64,000 nt of DNA, from positions 62,001 through 126,000 of the IMG/VR virus record IMGVR_UViG_3300032240_001991; one strand, given 5' to 3'. This document shows positions 2,647 through 64,000 of this stretch, piece by piece. Position 1 is the stretch's first letter. Each line of letters opens with the position of its first letter. Made by a program: the position numbers and the translations under genes. The notes under the pieces were generated by a model that saw only the letters and a program-made list of their open reading frames with translations, searched no databases and was not told where the DNA came from.

Positions 2647-3594
2647 TTACTTGGTGTTCAGGAAGGGAATCGGAGCACCTGCGTAGATATTCTGCGGCAG
2701 TTGACCGTTCCACGTCTTGGCCTTCTGCATCTCGACCTCAATGCGACGCAGTTCCAGCACATCCTTGTTCTGGGCCAGTGCAGCGTTCTGCACACGGAGT
2801 GCTTCAGCCTGGGCCTTGGCCACAGTCAAGTTAGCATAGGCCTCACCATCAGCAGTGGCCTTGGCCGCAGCAGCCTCGGCTTCTGCGATAGCGACCTTCT
2901 GCTTCTGCTCAGCCTCAACGGTCTTGAGCTTGTTCTCAGCAGCCAGGCGCAACTGCTCCTGCTCAACCTTGCTGTTGATGGCTCGCATATAACTATCCTG
3001 GAAGGCAAAGTTACGCATATCGATATTGATCACCTGGGCCCCATAGATAGCCAACTTGGCCTGCAGCGTGCTCTTAATGTCAGCAGACACCTGAGCTCGT
3101 TGTGCAATCAAGTCGGGGGCGGTATACTTGGCAGTCACAGCCTTAAACGCTTCCTGCGTGGCAGTCTGAACGTAACTGCTCAAGTCGCCATTGTGGCTGT
3201 ACTTCTCGTAGACTTCAGCAACCTTGTCAGTGGCAATGCTGTAGCGTACAGTAAGGTCAACGTGTACGGGCTGCTGATCGCTGGTGCTACCATCGGCCTT
3301 GTCAATAGAAGCAGTCTCAGCACGAATGCTGAAAATGTTCAACTTCTGCCAGGGCGGAAGGATTGCCAGGCCCTCAGCCTCAATGCCCACGATCTTACCA
3401 AACTGGGTAATGACGCCGCGGCTACCGGTGGGTACCGAAGCAAATGGGTTGGCCCATGCCAAAACCAGCACGCCAGCCACCGCTGCGGCCACATGGGTAA
3501 CGATCTTAGGTACGTTGACGTTGACGTCAGTGACTTCTTCGCCCATGCGATTGGTACGAGTGTTCTTAGTGAAATAACTGTCTGAAAATGACAT
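2647..3594 (-). CDS. SPFH/band-7/prohibitin family membrane protein
   Basis: N-terminal TM helix, VPTGSRGVITQFG, D..V..DLTVRY, coiled-coil AEAEA region, C-terminal W.G.LP. Confidence 0.9.
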   Translation of the reverse strand: MSFSDSYFTKNTRTNRMGEEVTDVNVNVPKIVTHVAAAVAGVLVLAWANPFASVPTGSRGVITQFGKIVGIEAEGLAILPPWQKLNIFSIRAETASIDKADGSTSDQQPVHVDLTVRYSIATDKVAEVYEKYSHNGDLSSYVQTATQEAFKAVTAKYTAPDLIAQRAQVSADIKSTLQAKLAIYGAQVINIDMRNFAFQDSYMRAINSKVEQEQLRLAAENKLKTVEAEQKQKVAIAEAEAAAAKATADGEAYANLTVAKAQAEALRVQNAALAQNKDVLELRRIEVEMQKAKTWNGQLPQNIYAGAPIPFLNTK

Positions 3595-3912: not shown

Positions 3913-4107
3913 TTAGGCCTTATCGAGTACACGAACAACGAGTTCCGTGCTCTTTACAGATTTAACCCGTTCCCATTTCTCTAGGATGTCATTTTTAGAA
4001 AAAGAACACTTCTTCTTGCGCCACTCTAGAAACTCTCGTGCCTCAATCCAGTAGACCGTTGAATCATCAACAGGGTCATACTCTTCAACCAATCGAAACT
4101 TAGCCAT
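3913..4107 (-). CDS. Hypothetical early protein
   Basis: GCAAGGAG leader; promoter 4137-4165. Confidence 0.75.
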   Translation of the reverse strand: MAKFRLVEEYDPVDDSTVYWIEAREFLEWRKKKCSFSKNDILEKWERVKSVKSTELVVRVLDKA

Positions 4108-4922: not shown

Positions 4923-5513
4923 TCAACCACTATGAGTCTTGAGAACGTCAATCAGGCTCTTGCTTAGGTCCCAGTGGCCCTTCAAAACCGCTTCGCAGGC
5001 CAGCTGGGAGATTCGATCCAGGAATTCCGTTTCTGAGGTGTGCTCTTGCACCAGCACACCCAGTCCCTTGAGTCGAGCCACCAGCTCAGGGTACCCCTCA
5101 GGGTGTTTGACGTAGCAGCCTTGCACATCGTCGTAGGCACGAGGGTCCACCGGCAACTGCTGTGGGCCCTGACGCTCGCTCACCTCTTTGGCTTCACGGA
5201 GACCCAGGTTGGCCAGCTCTCGCAGGGCCTTGATTCCGCTGACCTTGCGATTGCCCCATTCGGTGGGCATGGTTACAGTCACTTTGCTAGGTATCATAAC
5301 AAATCCTTTCTGAGGGAGGCTTCTGCTCAAATTAATGGGCTGCTTCAGAGCGTTACGAGCAATGTCCCGTGCAGCAACCACATCCGCGCGGGCCCACTCG
5401 TTGATGTCCTCGGCATAGTAGATCTTGCGTTCAATCTCAGACAGACTGGTCCGCAGTCGCTGGATTTCGGCTTGCAACAGGTCTTGATCGCTCACGTCTA
5501 CTCCTGTAAACAA
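4923..5513 (-). CDS. Protein with a ribosomal L7/L12 C-terminal-domain-like motif (alternative start at 5297)
   Basis: KVSGIKALRELANLGLREAKEVSE resembles the bL12 CTD KI.VIK.VR..TGLGLKEAK..VE; second RBS GAAAGGA before ATG 5297. Confidence 0.6.
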   Translation of the reverse strand: MFTGVDVSDQDLLQAEIQRLRTSLSEIERKIYYAEDINEWARADVVAARDIARNALKQPINLSRSLPQKGFVMIPSKVTVTMPTEWGNRKVSGIKALRELANLGLREAKEVSERQGPQQLPVDPRAYDDVQGCYVKHPEGYPELVARLKGLGVLVQEHTSETEFLDRISQLACEAVLKGHWDLSKSLIDVLKTHSG

Positions 5514-11892: not shown

Positions 11893-11976
11893 TGGTGCGA
11901 GTGGAGGGATTCGAACCCTCAAGCCGTTGGGCGGCAGATTTTAAGTCTGCTGTGTATACCGTTCCACCACACTCGC
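11893..11976 (-). tRNA. trnL: tRNA-Leu(UAA)
   Basis: GCGAGTG acceptor, anticodon arm GCAGA-CTTAAAA-TCTGC, long variable arm, GGTTCGAATCC T-arm, encoded CCA. Confidence 0.97.
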
Positions 11977-12147: not shown

Positions 12148-12223
12148 TGGTGGGCCCTCAGGGATTCGAACCCTGAACCAAAGGATTATGAGTCCTCTGC
12201 TCTAACCGTTGAGCTAAAGGCCC
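12148..12223 (-). tRNA. trnI: tRNA with CAU anticodon, probably tRNA-Ile2 (lysidine type) rather than Met
   Basis: 76 nt, GGGCCTT/GAGGCCC-like acceptor ending GGGCCCACCA, anticodon arm GAGGA-CTCATAA-TCCTT, encoded CCA; lacks the initiator GGG/CCC anticodon stem and 1:72 mismatch. Confidence 0.9.
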
Positions 12224-59139: not shown

Positions 59140-59234
59140 GATCTAGAAGGGAGTAAACTTGCGTAGCGAGTTGTTATAGTGAAAGGCTATAAGTCTAAAC
59201 GAAGGAAAAACAAGGCCCTTTGGAGTTCGTTAGG
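59140..59234 (+). ncRNA. Candidate structured RNA upstream of tmRNA
   Basis: After TAAATA 59129-59134; two hairpins plus crossing pairings GAAGGG/CCCTTT and CTAAACGAA/TTCGTTAG. Confidence 0.4.
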
Positions 59235-59263
59235 TTGACAACATTCCTAAATTGTTGTATAGT
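59235..59263 (+). promoter_or_regulatory. sigma70 promoter of tmRNA
   Basis: TTGACA-17 nt-TATAGT. Confidence 0.8.
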
Positions 59264-59269
59264 TTTTTT

Positions 59270-59600
59270 AATGGTAGTAAACTTTTAGCTAAAGGTGTTT
59301 TGGACGGGGGTGCGATTCCCCCCACCTCCACCAAAAGCATATGACTCTGGATACTGTGGTGCACATACGGTTCCTGAACATTAGGATAATAGGTAGTCCT
59401 AGTATGCTTTTGATGGGGGTGACCAGTTTCGACAGAGCAAGTAATAACCTGAAGGCTACCAGTGAGGCGACTGACTTAATCAGCGCAAAAACTATAAACG
59501 CAAACGATGACGTTTATGCTATGGAGCTTGCTGCTTAATTGCAGAGTTAGCATACCAGAGCTAACCACTTGTTAACAGAACGGTTAAGTAGGGGGAGTAA
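59270..59600 (+). ncRNA. ssrA: Permuted (two-piece) tmRNA: acceptor piece about 59270-59333, intervening segment 59334-59414, coding piece 59415-about 59590; tag ANDDVYAMELAA
   Basis: T-arm GGGGG-TGCGATT-CCCCC and CACCTCC-A-CCA come before the 5' GGGGGTG..TTTCGAC; G3:U70 pair; resume codon GCA at 59500, stop at 59536-59538. Confidence 0.93.
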
Positions 59601-59620
59601 AATCTCCCTATTTTATATTT
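59589..59620 (+). terminator. Terminator after tmRNA
   Basis: TAGGGGGAG-taaaa-TCTCCCTA followed by TTTTATATTT. Confidence 0.7.
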
Positions 59621-59625
59621 AGACA

Positions 59626-60258
59626 ATGAGAGAAATAATGAAAATTAAAGATAAATTGTATCCTAATGGTTCACCATACGAAAATGCAGAAATTTTACCG
59701 TACGATACACAGCATTTTCTTAATTATCCAACAGCATTAGTGCAAGGTATACAAACTATTCTTCCAAAAAGAATTATAGAAGTTGGATCATGGAAAGGTC
59801 ACTCTGCTAACTACATGGCAAAAGTTTGCCTACAATATACAGACAATTTTGAAATTGTTTGTATTGATACTTTTCTAGGTTCTGCTGAACATTATACACA
59901 TCCTGATCACTCAAAGGGATTACCTAGAAAAAATAATCTTACTAACCTGTTAAGTACTTTTCTTTCTAATACTATTCAAGAAAATAATACCAAATATATT
60001 ACTCCATTCCCTGTTGATTCAAATACTGGATTTCTTGTATTAAAAGAATGGGGATACCTTGCAGATTTAATCTACATTGACGGATCGCATGATTATAGAT
60101 CGGTCACTATTGACATTATGAACTACAGACAACTTGTAAGACGAGGAGGGGTTATGATCTTTGACGATTACCTGCATCCTCCTACAGGATATGCAATTGA
60201 CGATAATCTTAGCGGCGGTCAGGTGATTGACGGAAAATACTTTTGGGTTAATAACTAG
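59626..60258 (+). CDS. Class I SAM methyltransferase (Methyltransf_24-like)
   Basis: IIEVGSWKGHS, VCIDTF.GS, LIYIDGSH.Y, GGVMIFDDY. Confidence 0.88.
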   Translation: MREIMKIKDKLYPNGSPYENAEILPYDTQHFLNYPTALVQGIQTILPKRIIEVGSWKGHSANYMAKVCLQYTDNFEIVCIDTFLGSAEHYTHPDHSKGLPRKNNLTNLLSTFLSNTIQENNTKYITPFPVDSNTGFLVLKEWGYLADLIYIDGSHDYRSVTIDIMNYRQLVRRGGVMIFDDYLHPPTGYAIDDNLSGGQVIDGKYFWVNN

Positions 60259-60260
60259 TT

Positions 60261-60452
60261 TTATTTCTTTTTACCAGACTTCATATTAGCACACCAATGC
60301 GCCATTCTGCGTTTTTCGCCTGTGCTATTTTTAGCAACGCTGCGCAGTTTGCTTACACTCTGCTTGCAATTGACACCTGAACGTTTGGCTAGTCCTTTGC
60401 GACCCGGCTTTTTGCCATCAGCAAAGTTTTCTAGTAACTCATTTATACGCAT
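60261..60452 (-). CDS. Small basic protein with a capsid-targeting-like N-terminus
   Basis: MRINELLE then a K/R-rich module; TAAATA 4 nt before ATG 60452. Confidence 0.8.
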   Translation of the reverse strand: MRINELLENFADGKKPGRKGLAKRSGVNCKQSVSKLRSVAKNSTGEKRRMAHWCANMKSGKKK

Positions 60453-60485
60453 CACGTATTTATGATTGAATAAATTAAGTACACT

Positions 60486-61244
60486 ATGCCTAAAATATTT
60501 GATAGATTGTATTATGTAGGTCCTCTTGGGTTGGGCGACAGTTTTTTACATAACGGAATTGTACATCACTTTGCTAGTCAATGTTTTGAATTACATGTTC
60601 CTGCTTGGCCACAGATACACAAAACCGTTGCTTGCCTTTATCAAGATTTTCCAAATATTAAAGTTGTTCCGCTTAGACATTACGACGAAGGTGAAAATCA
60701 ATATATCGCAGAACAAAAGCTTTCTCGAATTTTACCTAACGATATGATTCGAATTAATAGTTCTACCGGAGAACCAATGGCGCCTCTTTGGGATGTGCAA
60801 GTCTATGCATATTATGGATTATCGTTTTCTTTAAGGTACAATAATTTTCATTTACCAAAACACGTAGAAGGCGCAGAAGAACTTTATCAAGATTTGTCTA
60901 AAGGAGAGCCTTACATCTTAGTTCACAAAAGATCTTCTAAGTATCCAACTGGATTTCCTATTGATATTAATAACTTTAGAAAGAATGCTGGATTACCAAC
61001 ATTAAAAGTTGTTGAAGTGCAAGAAGGCATTACAGATAATATGATGCAGTATGTTAAACTTATTGAAAATGCAGAGGAAATCCATTGTGTTGCCAGCAGC
61101 TTCCATTGTTTAGTAGACAGCATATATAATAGAACTAAAGGACGATTATTTTTCCATGACATACGAGCAGATGCTCTAATGAAAATTAATTCTCATGATA
61201 ACCAATTTAGTTGGCAAATAGTTGATTACGGTGTTAAACTATAA
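60486..61244 (+). CDS. Glycosyltransferase-like protein (GT9-like fold)
   Basis: LGLGDSFLHNGIV; LIENAEEIHCVASSF. Confidence 0.6.
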   Translation: MPKIFDRLYYVGPLGLGDSFLHNGIVHHFASQCFELHVPAWPQIHKTVACLYQDFPNIKVVPLRHYDEGENQYIAEQKLSRILPNDMIRINSSTGEPMAPLWDVQVYAYYGLSFSLRYNNFHLPKHVEGAEELYQDLSKGEPYILVHKRSSKYPTGFPIDINNFRKNAGLPTLKVVEVQEGITDNMMQYVKLIENAEEIHCVASSFHCLVDSIYNRTKGRLFFHDIRADALMKINSHDNQFSWQIVDYGVKL

Positions 61245-61260
61245 TACATATTTGTAAGGA

Positions 61261-61812
61261 GTGAATATGGCTAGTAAGAAACAAAAAAAGGTTCCAATGA
61301 ATGTAGTCTTCAAGACTCGTGTTCATGACGAATCAGTTGAAGGACCAAATCCTTATCGTTGGCAAGATGTTACCAGCAAGGATCTTTTTAAGGGTAAGCG
61401 AGTAGTGCTGTTTGCACTCCCGGGCGCCTTTACACCAACTTGCAGTAACTATCAGCTGCCTACCTACGAAAAGCTCTATAAGGATTTTCAGAAGGCAGGA
61501 GTAGATGATATCTATTGCTTGAGCGTTAACGACGCTTTTGTTATGTTCCAGTGGGGCAAAGCACAGAAGGTTAAGAACGTTAAGCTTATCCCAGACGGAA
61601 GTGGATCTTTTACTGACAAGATGGGTATGCTTGTTAAGAAGGATAACTTGGGTTTTGGTAAGCGTAGCTGGCGCTATGCTATGGTCGTTAATGACGGTGT
61701 AATTGAAGAGATGTTTGTTGAACCAGGTAAGAAACATAATATGGACACAGATCCTTACGAAGTTTCAAATCCTGAAACTGTTCTTCGATATCTTTTGAAT
61801 AACGCAGCGTAA
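61261..61812 (+). CDS. Peroxiredoxin (Prx5/Redoxin type)
   Basis: LFALPGAFTPTCS, SVNDAFVM..WG, PDG.G.FT..MG, RSWRYAMVV.DG. Confidence 0.95.
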   Translation: MNMASKKQKKVPMNVVFKTRVHDESVEGPNPYRWQDVTSKDLFKGKRVVLFALPGAFTPTCSNYQLPTYEKLYKDFQKAGVDDIYCLSVNDAFVMFQWGKAQKVKNVKLIPDGSGSFTDKMGMLVKKDNLGFGKRSWRYAMVVNDGVIEEMFVEPGKKHNMDTDPYEVSNPETVLRYLLNNAA

Positions 61813-62151: not shown

Positions 62152-62373
62152 ATGAAGTTAGGTGAAATTGTTAACTTTTATCAGACCGCGTCAGACGATG
62201 CTCTCTTAGAACATGTTGAACAGAATAACGACACCGGTCTTTCTTCAACAGATGTAGTTAAGATTATTCGTACGGGCAATGATCCCGGTGCATGGAGCGA
62301 GCCAATGACTGGAGATCAGTTATCAGAATATCTAGTTCAATTAGTAGGAACTCCAAAGAATGTCCAAAAATAA
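62152..62373 (+). CDS. Small acidic protein, possible partner/antitoxin of the YafQ-like RNase
   Basis: 73 aa, acidic, 14-bp overlap with the downstream RelE-fold gene. Confidence 0.55.
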   Translation: MKLGEIVNFYQTASDDALLEHVEQNNDTGLSSTDVVKIIRTGNDPGAWSEPMTGDQLSEYLVQLVGTPKNVQK

Positions 62374-62785
62374 AGGCAAACAACAACCTGTTGTTGCGCC
62401 TCCTACTGCGGCAAAGGCAGTTTTTAAGATTTGTGATCTTTTTGCTTCAACATTCAAAGAAAAAACTCAAGTTGATAGTTCTTTATTAGAAAAATTTGAA
62501 AACTTTAAAAAAACTAAAGAGAATGATCCGTTAGCTAGGTTTGGGGGCAGCGATAGATTATTTGTTTCTGGTGCTCCTTTAAGAAATGCTATACCTGGCG
62601 AAAATTTAGGTCATGCTCATTTAACACAAGACCTTAGCGTTGTTTATTCAATATCCGGAAAAAATCCCACTATTGTTAAACTTTACGGAGTATTCACTCA
62701 CGCAGAGTTAGGCACTGGCACACCGCCAAAGATTAAAACACAGCAGCAGATGGCTAAGACATTTTCTAACCAAAGATTCACTTAA
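62360..62785 (+). CDS. YafQ/RelE-family mRNA interferase-like protein
   Basis: GHAHLTQDLSVVYSI...LYGVFTHAELG aligns with YafQ RDAHVEPDWILIYKL...ERTGTHAALFG. Confidence 0.68.
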   Translation: MSKNKGKQQPVVAPPTAAKAVFKICDLFASTFKEKTQVDSSLLEKFENFKKTKENDPLARFGGSDRLFVSGAPLRNAIPGENLGHAHLTQDLSVVYSISGKNPTIVKLYGVFTHAELGTGTPPKIKTQQQMAKTFSNQRFT

Positions 62786-62790
62786 CAGAA

Positions 62791-62819
62791 TTGACTTCTA
62801 CTAAATAGAACTGTATAAT
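62791..62819 (+). promoter_or_regulatory. sigma70 promoter (with internal TAAATA) of the NAD-salvage operon
   Basis: TTGACT-tctacTAAATAgaactg(17)-TATAAT. Confidence 0.8.
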
Positions 62820-62828
62820 ATTATACAT

Positions 62829-62870
62829 AGAGCAGGGTAGACCAGCTCTTACAACAACAGGAGTAGATCC
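62829..62870 (+). promoter_or_regulatory. Twin GUAGA-loop RNA hairpin leader, copy 1
   Basis: AGAGC-A-GG[GTAGA]CC-A-GCTCT...GGA[GTAGA]TCC, 2 nt before the ATG. Confidence 0.8.
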
Positions 62871-62872
62871 AT

Positions 62873-63928
62873 ATGAAAAATAAATCCCAAGGGTGGACTG
62901 ACCGCGGCATTGAACCAAGACAGTACGACTTAGCAGTCGTAATTGGTCGATTCCAACCTTTCCACAATGCCCACGAAAAACTAATTGAACATGCCAAACA
63001 GCATAGTAAAGATGTATTGGTTCTGATTGGTAGTTCGTTTATTGCCCGCAACATTAAGAACCCGTTTACCTATGACGAACGTGTTGCTATGTTGCCAGAT
63101 GATGTAGTAGCTGCGCCAATTGAAGACGAACTTTATAATGACCAGCACTGGGTTGCTCGAGTACAGCAGCAGATTGAAGAAGAGTTGCACAATGTTTATG
63201 GCAATGTCTCTGATCGAACTGTTTGTATTGTTGGGCATGAGAAAGACGACAGTAGCCAATACTTGCGGTGGTTCCCGCAATATGACTTTGTAGAAGTGCC
63301 TAGTTTTGCTACATTAGACAGCACTAAGATCCGAGACATTCTGTTTGGAAGTGAAATGATTCCAGCGGATGTTATGCCTGAGCGTGTACAGGCCTTTATC
63401 AAGGCTTGGTGTATCAGTAACGAAGAGATTTATTTTAATCTCTGCGCCGAGCACAAGTTTATTAAAGACTATAAGCAGATGTGGAGCGCAGCACCATTTC
63501 AGCCTGTGTTTGTTACAACCGATGCTGTAGTTATTTGCCAAGGACACATCCTGCTTATTAAGCGTCGTATGGCGCCAGGTAAGGGTCTGTGGGCATTGCC
63601 CGGCGGATTTCTTGGACCAAATGAAAAAATTGAAGATTCTATGATTCGTGAACTAGAAGAAGAAACTCGTATCCGTGTTAACCGAGACATGCTACTCGCA
63701 TGTACTAAAGGATCACATGTGTTTGACCATCCTCGCCGCAGCGAACGTGGCAGGACAATTACTCATGCTTATCTGGTCGTACTGCAAGAACGAACTCTTC
63801 CTAAAGTGCGCGGATCAGATGATGCTGAGAGGGCGAAGTGGGTCCCGCTTTCTGAGTTTTATGATATGACGGACCAAATGTATGAAGATCATTATTCAAT
63901 CGCCACATACATGATTAATCGAGCCTAA
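62873..63928 (+). CDS. nadM: Bifunctional NMN adenylyltransferase / ADP-ribose pyrophosphatase (NadM-Nudix)
   Basis: IGRFQPFHNAH (HxxH), KNPFTYDER, LDSTKIR; Nudix box GLWALPGGF...E...RELEEET; RGSDDA. Confidence 0.95.
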   Translation: MKNKSQGWTDRGIEPRQYDLAVVIGRFQPFHNAHEKLIEHAKQHSKDVLVLIGSSFIARNIKNPFTYDERVAMLPDDVVAAPIEDELYNDQHWVARVQQQIEEELHNVYGNVSDRTVCIVGHEKDDSSQYLRWFPQYDFVEVPSFATLDSTKIRDILFGSEMIPADVMPERVQAFIKAWCISNEEIYFNLCAEHKFIKDYKQMWSAAPFQPVFVTTDAVVICQGHILLIKRRMAPGKGLWALPGGFLGPNEKIEDSMIRELEEETRIRVNRDMLLACTKGSHVFDHPRRSERGRTITHAYLVVLQERTLPKVRGSDDAERAKWVPLSEFYDMTDQMYEDHYSIATYMINRA

Positions 63929-63974
63929 GTGCAGGGTAGACCAGCACTATTTTTAACAATTAAGGAGTAGATCC
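63928..63974 (+). promoter_or_regulatory. Twin GUAGA-loop RNA hairpin leader, copy 2
   Basis: AGTGC-A-GG[GTAGA]CC-A-GCACT...GGA[GTAGA]TCC, 2 nt before the ATG. Confidence 0.8.
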
Positions 63975-63976
63975 AA

Positions 63977-64000
63977 ATGAATATTATTTTAAACACCGAT
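63977..64000 (+). CDS. nadV: Probable nicotinamide phosphoribosyltransferase (NadV/NAMPT), first 8 codons only
   Basis: MNIILNTD matches the NAMPT N-terminus (IL.TDSYK); follows nadM with an AAGGAG RBS; truncated by the window edge. Confidence 0.6.

What the first reader, a model, noticed from the sequence alone, without database searches (positions are those of the whole stretch)
62829..63979. Twin GUAGA-pentaloop RNA operator, with covariation, over the RBS of both NAD-salvage genes
Seen: the same two-hairpin element precedes nadM-Nudix (62829-62870) and the nadV-like gene (63928-63974). Hairpin 1 is AGAGC-A-GG[GUAGA]CC-A-GCUCU in copy 1 and AGUGC-A-GG[GUAGA]CC-A-GCACU in copy 2, a compensatory A-U to U-A change. 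After an A-rich linker containing AACAA, hairpin 2 is GGA[GUAGA]UCC, which contains the AGGAG SD and ends 2 nt before the AUG. All four loops are identical, and copy 1 starts just after the predicted TSS. Known: NadM plus NadV is the NAMPT/NMNAT route that phages use to rebuild NAD+ against NAD-depleting immunity (NARP2-type), and paired identical loops are the hallmark of translational operators bound by dimeric RNA-binding proteins. Inference: an undescribed post-transcriptional regulon, either a protein operator (for example NadM-Nudix autoregulation sensing NAD+/ADP-ribose) or a mini-riboswitch, that switches NAD rescue on when defence drains NAD+.
Basis: partly seen in the sequence, partly recalled or inferred. 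Interest (0 to 1): 0.88.

Follow-up and report, generated by a model that had tools for sequence, protein, structure and literature searches.

The report
Two-hairpin leader RNA of NAD-salvage genes
The two small hairpin pairs in front of this jumbo phage's NAD-rebuilding genes are real and belong to a widespread, apparently undescribed leader RNA found before NAD-synthesis genes in many phages and bacteria; it most likely throttles their translation in response to an NAD-related signal.

Summary
The same two-hairpin element sits 2 nt before the AUG of nadM-Nudix (62829-62870) and of nadV (63928-63974), and nowhere else in the 64 kb window.

It is not a local curiosity. Thirteen further copies of this GUAGA type, from related uncultured phages, all lie before nadM or nadV. 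All five outer pairs of hairpin 1 covary.

A covariance model was built only from AUAGA-loop instances in phage contigs whose NadM is 35-46% identical to the window's and in bacteria. It finds both window copies. It also gives 170 sense-strand hits in 1.1 Mb of nadM loci, in 57 of 78 phage loci and 42 of 80 bacterial loci. These hits lie directly before nadM, nadV, nadA or the first ORF of a nad operon.

The general design is a covarying hairpin with an R-N-N-G-A pentaloop 28-42 nt before the AUG, an A/C-rich linker, and a hairpin that holds the Shine-Dalgarno and ends at the start codon.

There is no Rfam 15 match and nothing in the searched literature. It is distinct from the NrtR DNA operator, which lies separately upstream in some bacteria.

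The mechanism is inferred: translational control coupled to an NAD-pathway signal. I favour a minimal riboswitch; a protein operator is the main rival. The twin identical loops are peculiar to this clade.

The parts
62791..62796 (+). -35 hexamer TTGACT of the nadM-nadV promoter
   Evidence: Consensus scan, 11 of 12 matches with a 17-nt spacer (L011 5919-5947 = window +56872). Relatives carry TTGACA/TTGACT-17-TATAAT at the same distance before hairpin 1.
62814..62819 (+). -10 hexamer TATAAT; predicted transcript start about 62826, 2-3 nt before hairpin 1
   Evidence: The start position is inferred from standard sigma-70 spacing.
62829..62849 (+). Copy 1, hairpin 1: 5 outer pairs, an A.A mismatch, 2 G-C pairs and a GUAGA pentaloop
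   Evidence: Sequence; minimum-energy fold. All 5 outer pairs covary across 15 copies, with 99% of cells paired and 26 double changes. Hit by model R1 at 62828-62875, 17.8 bits.
62850..62859 (+). Copy 1 linker UACAACAACA: A/C-rich, G-poor, unpaired
   Evidence: Across the family the linker is A 40%, U 25%, C 25%, G 10%.
62860..62870 (+). Copy 1, hairpin 2: GGA[GUAGA]UCC. It pairs the GGA of the AGGAG Shine-Dalgarno and ends 2 nt before the AUG
   Evidence: Across the family the SD hairpin averages 6.4 bp against 4.1 bp for control genes (p = 9e-32) and ends -3 to +3 nt from the start codon.
62873..63928 (+). nadM-Nudix gene (351 aa): NMN adenylyltransferase fused to ADP-ribose pyrophosphatase
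   Evidence: Pfam CTP_transf_like plus NUDIX. The best phage relatives, at 46% identity or less, are annotated as NadM family.
63928..63948 (+). Copy 2, hairpin 1 (AGUGC-A-GG[GUAGA]CC-A-GCACU). It begins on the last base of the nadM stop codon and has no promoter in front, so it is internal to the operon mRNA
   Evidence: R1 hit at 63927-63979, 18.6 bits.
63949..63963 (+). Copy 2 linker AUUUUUAACAAUUAA
63964..63974 (+). Copy 2, hairpin 2: GGA[GUAGA]UCC over the SD, ending 2 nt before the AUG
63977..64000 (+). Start of nadV (nicotinamide phosphoribosyltransferase). The gene runs off the window; the full 457 aa is in L011:7105-8478, followed by a 13-bp-stem terminator hairpin
   Evidence: Pfam NAMPT_N plus NAPRTase; terminator hairpin.

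Best explanation
The two elements are copies of a cis-acting leader RNA. They are the GUAGA-loop variant of a widespread two-hairpin leader that sits immediately before nadM, nadV, nadA and the first ORFs of nad operons in many phages and bacteria.

Shown:
- Hairpin 1 is a structure-conserved, sequence-variable stem that presents a conserved R-N-N-G-A pentaloop 28-42 nt before the AUG.
- Hairpin 2 encloses the Shine-Dalgarno and ends at the start codon.
- An unpaired A/C-rich linker joins them.
- The element always lies in sense orientation and is nearly restricted to NAD genes.

Inferred: it controls translation initiation. Hairpin 2 is the gate on the ribosome-binding site. Hairpin 1 is the recognition module for an NAD-pathway signal. 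Binding of that signal locks the closed state, so NadM and NadV are made when the signal falls, for example when a defence system burns NAD+.

I favour direct metabolite binding, meaning a minimal riboswitch in the style of guanidine-II with NAD+ or a close derivative as ligand.

My sub-probabilities: real conserved RNA structure 0.97; acts on translation 0.8; responds to an NAD-related signal 0.6; direct metabolite sensing 0.35-0.4.
For: The exact-pattern scan of viral contigs gave 10 loci, every match directly before nadM or nadV. The metagenome scan added 7 more true copies, plus about 20 chance matches that lack both the outer stem and an ATG.

In the window clade (15 copies), all 5 outer pairs of hairpin 1 covary and 99% of cells are paired, against 18-40% when the partner is slid. 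RNAalifold predicts both hairpins.

In the wider family, an unbiased census of pentaloops 27-42 nt before nadM or nadV gave ATAGA 50, AGAGA 20, AGTGA 6 and GGAGA 6. ATAGA appeared 7 times among 1242 other genes, and most of those are nad-operon leaders.

ATAGA or AGAGA at that distance is flanked by complementary bases in 62-86% of cases at stem positions 1-7. The figure is 36-41% for 3365 control occurrences.

Hairpin 2 averages 6.4 bp against 4.1 bp in controls (p = 9e-32), and its outer pair covaries.

Model R1 contains no window-type sequence. It gives 107 and 63 hits, all in sense orientation: 57 of 78 phage loci and 42 of 80 bacterial loci. In the phage set they lie before nadM (47), nadV (about 44), nadA (1) and about 12 leader ORFs. 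R1 finds exactly the two window copies in 64 kb.

Within one genome the stems of the nadM and nadV copies differ completely while the loops agree.

The window's hairpin 2 has only 3 pairs, too weak to block a ribosome alone, yet it is invariant across NadM proteins 54-100% identical. That argues it is read by something.
Against: Very few nucleotides are conserved, and there is no conserved internal loop or junction to form an obvious ligand pocket. Loop positions 2-3 vary.

The invariance of the inner parts in the window clade is partly imposed by my exact search pattern.

R1 scores for the window copies are modest: 17.8 and 18.6 bits, E about 0.2-0.4 for 1.2 Mb.

Several cultured nadM phages lack hairpin 1 (KVP40, phiEap-3, Aeromonas 31, Arash, MHG19, Moby), so the element is dispensable.

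I found no consistent pseudoknot or alternative pairing that would link hairpin 1 to hairpin 2.

There is no experimental evidence of any kind. Neither the ligand nor the direction of regulation is known.
Confidence: 0.42

Rival explanations
1. Protein-bound translational operator. A protein recognises the pentaloop of hairpin 1, and in the window clade both GUAGA loops, possibly as a dimer. Bound next to or on the SD hairpin, it blocks 30S binding. The protein could be NadM-Nudix or NadV acting on their own mRNAs with substrate or product as effector, or an unidentified conserved host protein.
For: The conserved part is a small hairpin loop on a free-varying stem, which is typical of protein operators such as MS2, boxB or the IRE. 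Loop class and closing pair tend to agree between the nadM and nadV copies of one genome and differ between lineages, as co-evolution with a genome-encoded reader would give. The window clade has two identical or near-identical loops, GUAGA and GAAGA, both fitting G-N-R-N-A. By the design of my searches, every locus carrying the element also encodes NadM.
Against: The element spans several bacterial phyla and unrelated phage groups, and apart from the NAD enzymes themselves no conserved neighbouring gene was seen (phage loci). nadA, SPFH and small-ORF targets would need to belong to the same autoregulatory circuit. To my knowledge no RNA-binding activity has been reported for NadM or NadV. Agreement of loop class within a genome can also come from common descent.
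Confidence: 0.3
2. Constitutive leader with no sensing. Hairpin 1 stabilises the mRNA or fixes its architecture. Hairpin 2 merely sets a low, fixed translation rate or couples translation within the operon. The association with NAD genes reflects co-transfer of the leader with the gene cassette.
For: Hairpin 1 lies at the predicted 5' end of the transcript in many cases. SD hairpins without hairpin 1 occur before nadM in KVP40 and Moby. nadM and nadV genes lacking hairpin 1 still average 4.9 bp against 4.1 bp in controls.
Against: A stabiliser needs no conserved loop sequence, yet the loop is kept across NadM proteins only 35-46% identical. Copy 2 in the window, and many nadV copies, are internal to the mRNA. 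The element was placed independently before nadM, nadV, nadA, an SPFH gene and unrelated small ORFs, which looks like a regulon rather than a passenger.
Confidence: 0.15
3. Transcription attenuator. Hairpin 1 followed by a U-run acts as a conditional intrinsic terminator.
For: Some copies have U5-6 right after hairpin 1: window copy 2 (GCACUAUUUUU), both L008 copies, L069 nadV and L097.
Against: Window copy 1 and most family members have no U-run. No alternative antiterminator pairing was found. The fixed distance to the AUG and the SD hairpin point to translation.
Confidence: 0.06
4. DNA-level operator. The palindrome of hairpin 1 is the binding site of a dimeric transcription factor such as NrtR.
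For: Hairpin 1 read as DNA is an imperfect palindrome of 19-25 bp near the promoter. NrtR-like genes lie next to 10 bacterial loci that carry the motif.
Against: In those same loci a separate palindrome, conserved in sequence (TAGTGGC...GCCACTA type), sits at the promoter 60-110 nt before the ATG; the hairpins lie downstream of it. NrtR sites are 21-bp palindromes with a GT-N7-AC core (PMC2330246), and hairpin 1 has no such core. Its arms differ completely between two copies in one genome, while its asymmetric centre is conserved. Some stems contain G.U pairs, three of them in L095 nadV. Window copy 2 has no promoter.
Confidence: 0.02

Closest known systems
Guanidine-II riboswitch (mini-ykkC)
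   Same: Minimal architecture: two short hairpins with small conserved loops and conserved closing pairs, joined by a variable unstructured linker, with the second hairpin at the ribosome-binding site. In the window clade the two loops are identical, as they are in mini-ykkC. This comparison rests on my own knowledge of that family.
   Different: The loops here are R-N-N-G-A pentaloops, not ACGR tetraloops. In most of the family the two loops are not alike. The gene association is NAD genes. No ligand is known. No Rfam family matches.
NAD+-I riboswitch (nadA motif)
   Same: Tandem stem-loops in the leader of NAD-synthesis genes, nadA included.
   Different: The Rfam model does not match. There is no conserved bulged internal loop here: the window's A.A mismatch is replaced by A.G or U.G in relatives. 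NAD+-I is known from 101 representatives, in Acidobacteria only (PMC7749635). This motif occurs in Proteobacteria, cyanobacteria and phages.
NAD+-II riboswitch (pnuC motif)
   Same: A small leader that hides the ribosome-binding site of an NAD-related gene.
   Different: The pnuC motif is P1-P1a plus a pseudoknot with the RBS, and has about 130 representatives, all in Streptococcus and upstream of pnuC (PMC7749635). Here I found no consistent pseudoknot and no Rfam match.
Phage hairpin operators read by proteins (lambda N-boxB, MS2 coat-protein operator)
   Same: A short hairpin whose loop, not stem, carries the specificity. GUAGA and GAAGA fit the G-N-R-N-A pentaloop pattern of boxB (my own knowledge). 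The MS2-type operator also overlaps a start site.
   Different: Most family members have A, not G, at loop position 1. The element is gene-pathway specific and also occurs in bacteria. No cognate protein is known. The Rfam MS2 model gives no hit at these sites.
NrtR operator (Nudix-related transcriptional regulator of NAD genes)
   Same: The same regulon: nadM-nadV and nadA. The two co-occur in some Gammaproteobacteria.
   Different: The NrtR box is a sequence-conserved 21-bp DNA palindrome at the promoter. It is physically separate from the leader hairpins.
PyrR-binding hairpin of pyr leaders
   Same: From memory only: the PyrR loop consensus contains CCAGAGAGG, which is the same as class-B hairpin 1 (for example AUCC[AGAGA]GGAU in L030).
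   Different: The Rfam PyrR model gives no hit even in an 831-nt search. The dominant class has G[AUAGA]C. The genes are not pyr genes. Treat this as a lead, not a relationship.

Membership tests
Two-hairpin NAD-gene leader (family defined in this report) | Hairpin 1: a covarying stem closing an R-N-N-G-A pentaloop with a G-C or C-G closing pair | tested here: met
   The window has GG[GUAGA]CC. For the family.
Two-hairpin NAD-gene leader (family defined in this report) | 28-42 nt between the end of loop 1 and the start codon | tested here: met
   31 nt in copy 1 and 36 nt in copy 2. The family distribution peaks at 31-37 nt.
Two-hairpin NAD-gene leader (family defined in this report) | An SD-containing hairpin ending within about 3 nt of the start codon | tested here: met
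   GGA[GUAGA]UCC ends 2 nt before the AUG in both copies. Family data. The window version is short (3 bp) and its register differs from the common type, in which the SD is in the loop.
Two-hairpin NAD-gene leader (family defined in this report) | Sense orientation, directly before nadM, nadV, nadA or a nad-operon leader ORF | tested here: met
Two-hairpin NAD-gene leader (family defined in this report) | Recognised by a covariance model built without window-type sequences | tested here: met
   R1 gives 17.8 and 18.6 bits. These are the only two hits in the window at the E <= 1 cut-off, on either strand, but their E-values are weak: 0.36 and 0.23 over 1.2 Mb.
NAD+-I riboswitch (nadA motif, Rfam) | Match to the Rfam covariance model | tested here: not met
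   No hit at E <= 10 in the window region, or in the phage and bacterial loci including the L018 and L096 nadA leaders.
NAD+-I riboswitch (nadA motif, Rfam) | Binds NAD+ or its ADP moiety | not testable with these tools
   Needs in-line probing or ITC.
NAD+-II riboswitch (pnuC motif, Rfam) | Match to the Rfam model; P1-P1a plus a pseudoknot that includes the RBS | tested here: not met
   No Rfam hit. Loop-to-linker or loop-to-start complementarity is inconsistent.
Guanidine-II riboswitch (mini-ykkC) | Two hairpins, each with an ACGR tetraloop | tested here: not met
   The loops are GUAGA pentaloops. No Rfam hit.
Guanidine-II riboswitch (mini-ykkC) | Variable linker, with the second hairpin at the SD | tested here: met
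   The linker is 10-15 nt in the window and 10-20 nt across the family. This is a match of architecture only.
NrtR DNA operator | 21-bp palindrome with a GT-N7-AC core, conserved in sequence within a lineage (PMC2330246) | tested here: not met
   Hairpin 1 has no such core. Its arms differ between copies in one genome. A separate NrtR-type box lies upstream in 10 bacterial loci.
lambda-type boxB / N antitermination site | G-N-R-N-A pentaloop on a short stem, read by an arginine-rich N protein at a nut site | tested here: inconclusive
   The loop pattern fits in the window clade only (GUAGA, GAAGA). The position at the SD, the NAD-gene specificity and the bacterial copies do not fit. I did not search for an N-like protein.
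PyrR binding site (Rfam) | Match to the Rfam model | tested here: not met
   No hit in L030 2180-3010, which holds two class-B copies, nor.

The most novel reading that the evidence does not exclude
This is a third class of NAD-sensing riboswitch, by far the most widespread. It would be a roughly 50-nt two-hairpin aptamer in which a pentaloop hairpin and the Shine-Dalgarno hairpin together bind NAD+ or NMN, ADP-ribose or nicotinamide. Bacteria of several phyla would use it. Phages would have borrowed it so that their NAD-rebuilding enzymes are translated only when host immunity has depleted NAD+.
Probability: 0.33. Interest if true: 0.92.

Novelty: new variant of a known kind. Interest (0 to 1): 0.82.

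Why it matters
NAD+ is among the most abundant and ancient cofactors. Its two known riboswitch classes are nevertheless rare and narrowly distributed: about 100 representatives in Acidobacteria and about 130 in Streptococcus (PMC7749635). The authors of that paper call this scarcity strange and expect more classes to be found.

A small leader specific to nadM, nadV and nadA, present in Proteobacteria, cyanobacteria and many large phages, is a concrete and testable candidate for the missing regulation. That holds whether the sensor turns out to be the RNA itself or a protein.

For phage biology, it would mean that the NAD+ reconstitution route used against NAD-depleting defence is itself regulated after transcription, possibly by the very metabolite the defence destroys.

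In some bacteria the leader sits behind an NrtR-controlled promoter. This suggests two layers of control that read different signals.

Tried and rejected
- Megablast of the region against cultured phages found no match.
- Five Rfam 15 scans, at gathering and permissive thresholds, covered the window, 18 phage or bacterial loci and a short class-B region. Nothing matched at the sites.
- Literature searches for a nadM or nadV RNA motif, an NAD+-III class, an NMN, nicotinamide or ADP-ribose riboswitch, and nadV plus riboswitch found nothing relevant. One search for the string CCAGAGAGG returned only primers.
- Pseudoknot between loop 1 and the linker, hairpin 2 or the start codon. CUAU/UUAU/UCUA is enriched downstream of AUAGA loops (64% against 24%). 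But it clusters in one phage subclade at -19 or coincides with YUAUG, and it is absent from most bacterial copies, so I rejected it as a general feature.
- Loop-loop kissing: the loops are alike, not complementary.
- Hairpin 1 as the NrtR box: rejected.
- PyrR site: not supported.
- CsrA site: by inspection, hairpin 2 often shows GGA in a loop, but hairpin 1 usually lacks GGA; from my own knowledge, cyanobacteria lack CsrA. I ran no formal test.
- Cultured phages: KVP40, phiEap-3, Aeromonas phage 31, Arash, MHG19 and Moby lack hairpin 1.
- MAFFT on all classes together shifted class B by two columns, so I built the model from the AUAGA class only.
Full report
**1. The observation**

Reading 62500-64000 confirms every detail. 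Copy 1 has hairpin 1 at 62829-62849 (AGAGC-A-GG[GTAGA]CC-A-GCTCT), the linker TACAACAACA, and hairpin 2 at 62860-62870 (GGA[GTAGA]TCC, containing the AGGAG Shine-Dalgarno). The ATG of a 351-aa ORF is at 62873. Copy 2 has hairpin 1 at 63928-63948 (AGTGC...GCACT), starting on the last base of that ORF's stop codon. Its hairpin 2 is at 63964-63974, and an ATG follows at 63977.

The ORFs are NadM-type NMN adenylyltransferase plus NUDIX, and NAMPT_N plus NAPRTase, that is NadV. The conserved 15-mer and 11-mer occur only at these two places in 64 kb. A TTGACT-17-TATAAT promoter lies at 62791-62819, which puts the predicted transcript start 2-3 nt before hairpin 1. Copy 2 has no promoter and is therefore internal to the mRNA. 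A strong terminator hairpin follows nadV just outside the window. Both hairpins are the minimum-energy fold of each copy.

**2. The source, and close relatives**

The window comes from a 326,658-bp uncultured jumbo phage contig (IMGVR_UViG_3300032240_001991). No cultured phage is close: megablast finds nothing, and the best NadM relative is 46% identical.

An exact search for GGGTAGACC-N8-38-GGAGTAGATCC in viral contigs gave 10 loci from 8 contigs. Every match lies directly before the ATG of nadM or nadV. The same search in metagenome contigs added 7 true copies. It also returned about 20 matches in GC-rich DNA that have neither an outer stem nor an ATG, and these serve as an internal picture of chance.

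In the 15 aligned copies (A4), the five outer pairs of hairpin 1 all show compensatory changes. There are 26 cells changed on both sides and 99% of cells are paired, against 18-40% when the 3' partner is slid by 1-3 columns. RNAalifold predicts both hairpins independently. The A.A mismatch is A.G in two copies and U.G in two others, so it is not a conserved bulge.

One caveat: the inner pairs, both loops and hairpin 2 were fixed by my search pattern, so their invariance in A4 carries no information. Protein-based retrieval of the clade's nadV loci, which does not depend on the motif, showed one copy whose hairpin-2 loop is GAAGA. It also showed two contigs in which nadV has no leader at all.

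**3. The wider family**

To avoid the pattern bias, I fetched 78 phage loci that encode distant NadM proteins, 35-46% identical to the window's. The window's exact motif is absent there, but the 90 nt before nadM show the same design. A promoter is followed by a hairpin with a variable stem and a conserved pentaloop: G[AUAGA]C in one large class, C[AGAGA], C[AGUGA] or C[AGCGA]G in another. An A/C-rich linker comes next, and then a hairpin around the SD that ends at the ATG.

A simple descriptor scan of 1.36 Mb gave 69 hits. About 60 lie before nadM or nadV. Others lie before a NadA quinolinate synthase (Pfam 1e-83) and before small unknown ORFs that head nad operons.

A NadM-based scan of one genome per bacterial species returned 80 loci. 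The same element precedes nadM, nadV and nadA in:
- Gammaproteobacteria: Marinicella, Agitococcus, Microbulbifer, Neptuniibacter, Alcanivorax, Pseudoalteromonas luteoviolacea, Budvicia aquatica, Cellvibrio, Hahella, Dasania, Methylomonas, Thiorhodococcus, and weakly Psychrobacter;
- a betaproteobacterium (Verticiella);
- Epsilonproteobacteria (Sulfurovum);
- an alphaproteobacterium (Aestuariispira);
- cyanobacteria, with a GGAGA loop;
- an Anaerolineales genome.

In two loci it also precedes an SPFH/Band_7 gene downstream of the nad genes.

**4. Statistics that do not depend on how I picked the instances**

(a) I listed every 5-nt-loop hairpin of at least 4 bp lying 27-42 nt before a start codon, without specifying the loop. 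For nadM and nadV the loops are dominated by ATAGA (50), AGAGA (20), AGTGA (6), GGAGA (6), ACAGA (5) and AAAGA (5). Among 1242 other genes the commonest loop is again ATAGA, with 7 cases, and most of those are nad-operon leaders.

(b) I took every ATAGA or AGAGA 27-42 nt before nadM or nadV, with no pairing requirement. Positions 1-7 on either side are complementary in 62-86% of 137 cases, against 36-41% for 3365 occurrences elsewhere in the same loci.

(c) The best hairpin ending at the start codon has 6.4 pairs on average in motif genes, against 4.1 in 390 control genes with good SDs (p = 9e-32). It ends -3 to +3 nt from the start codon, and its loop is usually the core of the SD: GAG, GAU or GAA. 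The outermost of its four modelled pairs shows AU, UA, GC and CG.

(d) The linker is A 40% and G 10%.

**5. Covariance model**

I built R1 from 33 AUAGA-class instances from phages and bacteria, with no window-type sequence.

It found 107 hits (E <= 1) in 607 kb of phage loci plus the window, and 63 hits in 525 kb of bacterial loci. All are in sense orientation relative to the gene that follows. In the phage set they lie before nadM (47), nadV (about 44), nadA (1) and about 12 leader ORFs of nad operons; one hit looks false and one is cut off. At least one hit occurs in 57 of 78 phage loci and 42 of 80 bacterial loci.

In the 64-kb window, R1 hits only 62828-62875 (17.8 bits) and 63927-63979 (18.6 bits). 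The window copies are therefore recognisable, if weakly, as members of the general family. On the model-fitted alignment of 107 hits, 87% of cells pair and 447 cells are changed on both sides, against 144 in shuffles. That alignment does lean towards the model.

**6. What it is not**

Rfam 15 has no family at any of these sites, under permissive thresholds and in small search spaces. So it is neither the nadA (NAD+-I) nor the pnuC (NAD+-II) motif, nor mini-ykkC, nor the PyrR site.

The paper library holds nothing that links nadM or nadV with a riboswitch or an RNA motif.

It is also not the NrtR operator. NrtR sites are 21-bp palindromes with a GT-N7-AC core (PMC2330246). A profile of the NadM Nudix domain found NrtR-like genes next to 10 gammaproteobacterial loci that carry the motif. 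The upstream regions of those loci carry a separate palindrome, conserved in sequence (TAGTGGC...GCCACTA type), at the promoter. The two-hairpin leader lies downstream of it.

The contrast is instructive. The DNA operator keeps its arms between genomes. Hairpin 1 changes its arms completely even between the nadM and nadV copies of a single genome, and keeps only its asymmetric loop. Those bacteria thus appear to have two layers of control.

**7. How it probably works**

What is shown: the structure, its position over the ribosome-binding site, its orientation, and its near-exclusive association with NAD-synthesis genes.

What is inferred: translational control. Hairpin 2 gates the SD and start codon, and hairpin 1 is a recognition module. 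Three points suggest that something reads the loops:
- The loops are conserved across very distant NadM proteins.
- In the window clade hairpin 2 has only 3 pairs, thermodynamically trivial, yet it is kept.
- In that clade its loop has converged on the loop of hairpin 1 (GUAGA; GAAGA in one copy).

A metabolite is favoured by the classic riboswitch signature: one small motif, one pathway, many phyla plus phages, and no conserved partner gene. The guanidine-II riboswitch is a precedent for a two-mini-hairpin riboswitch. A protein is favoured by how few conserved nucleotides there are, by the absence of an obvious pocket, and by lineage-specific loop classes.

I tested a structural link between the hairpins, either a pseudoknot or an alternative pairing, and found it inconsistent. 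The likeliest logic is therefore that the bound state stabilises the closed SD hairpin, which makes this an OFF switch. With NAD+ as the signal, NadM and NadV would be made when NAD+ falls. That fits the role of this enzyme pair in phage NAD+ reconstitution.

My estimates: riboswitch 0.35-0.4, protein operator 0.3, constitutive leader 0.15, attenuator 0.06, DNA operator 0.02.

**8. Novelty and verdict**

The known NAD+ riboswitches are rare and confined to Acidobacteria and Streptococcus (PMC7749635), so a widespread candidate would matter.

Useful experimental material exists. Synechococcus phage BUCT-ZZ01 has the motif with an AAAGA loop before both genes. Klebsiella jumbo phage RaK2 has a variant with GUAGUA-type loops. 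Several cultured bacteria also carry it.

I score interest at 0.82. The main uncertainty is the mechanism, not whether the element exists.

Noticed in passing
window 59234-59629 (+): The phage encodes a permuted (two-piece) tmRNA of betaproteobacterial type: Rfam tmRNA_permuted 148 bits and beta_tmRNA 131 bits. ARAGORN gives the tag peptide as ANDDVYAMELAA. This hints at a betaproteobacterial host.
   Followed up: no
window 11893-11976 (-) and 12148-12223 (-): Two phage tRNA genes, tRNA-Leu(UAA) and tRNA-Met(CAU).
   Followed up: no
L095, L125, L126, L136, L139, L145, L147, L159, L161, L172 (upstream of nadM and nadV): These gammaproteobacterial nad operons carry both an NrtR-type palindrome at the promoter (TAGTGGC...GCCACTA type), with a divergent NrtR-like gene, and the two-hairpin leader. 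This suggests two-layer control. NrtR-like genes were seen only next to motif-bearing loci: 10 of 42, against 0 of 38.
   Followed up: partly
L018:1868-1916 and L096:2032-2083: The leader also precedes nadA (quinolinate synthase, de novo pathway), once in a phage contig and once in a Burkholderiales MAG. The regulon is therefore not limited to salvage.
   Followed up: partly
L125:5623-5700 and L147:6633-6691: The leader precedes an SPFH/Band_7 membrane-protein gene downstream of the nad genes in Microbulbifer and in a Pseudomonadales genome. The link to NAD is unexplained.
   Followed up: no
L042, L068, L078 (108 aa, phrog_12218); L051, L060, L081 (118 aa, phrog_37251); L045, L089 (117-136 aa, phrog_33851); L030, L067 (213-215 aa, phrog_1843); L055 (155 aa): Several unrelated small ORF families of unknown function sit as the first gene of phage nad operons and carry the leader instead of nadM. 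They are candidates for new NAD-related or counter-defence functions.
   Followed up: partly
L215 about 2950-2994 (KVP40 natV); L218 about 2965-3000 and 4040-4080 (Moby nadM, nadV): Cultured phages that lack hairpin 1 still keep an SD-enclosing hairpin before nadM or nadV, for example UGGG-GAG-CCCA and AGGAA-GGAGU-UUCCU. The gate may be older or more general than the sensor hairpin.
   Followed up: no
L219 about 2935-2985 and 5123-5171 (Klebsiella phage RaK2): A variant leader before both nadM and nadV. Hairpin-1 loops are 6-8 nt and contain GUAG (GUAGUA, UGAUGUAG). Hairpin 2 is CUAAG-GGAGU-CUUAG. R1 detects it only weakly, at 15.6 bits.
   Followed up: partly
window 62850-62859; L193, L186, L212, L013 linkers: Linkers of the window clade are runs of AAC/ACA, for example ACAACAACA and AACAACAA. 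From general knowledge these fit the A-R-N repeats bound by the distal face of Hfq and the AAnAAnAA Crc/Hfq motif. The pattern is not general across the family.
   Followed up: no
window 63944-63954; both L008 copies; L069 nadV; L097: Some copies have a U5-6 run directly after hairpin 1, which makes them terminator-like. Window copy 1 and most members do not.
   Followed up: partly
window 62857-62870 and 63961-63974: UAAGGAGUAGAUC (exact in copy 2; copy 1 reads ACAGGAGUAGAUC) matches 11 of 13 positions of the perfect complement of the 16S rRNA 3' end, UAAGGAGGUGAUC (general knowledge). The opened hairpin 2 would be an unusually long SD. This may be coincidence.
   Followed up: no
window 59626-61812 and 62360-62785: Genes just upstream of the nad operon: a class-I methyltransferase (Methyltransf_24), an unknown 252-aa ORF, a peroxiredoxin-like Redoxin/AhpC protein, and a 141-aa ORF with no Pfam or PHROG match.
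   Followed up: partly
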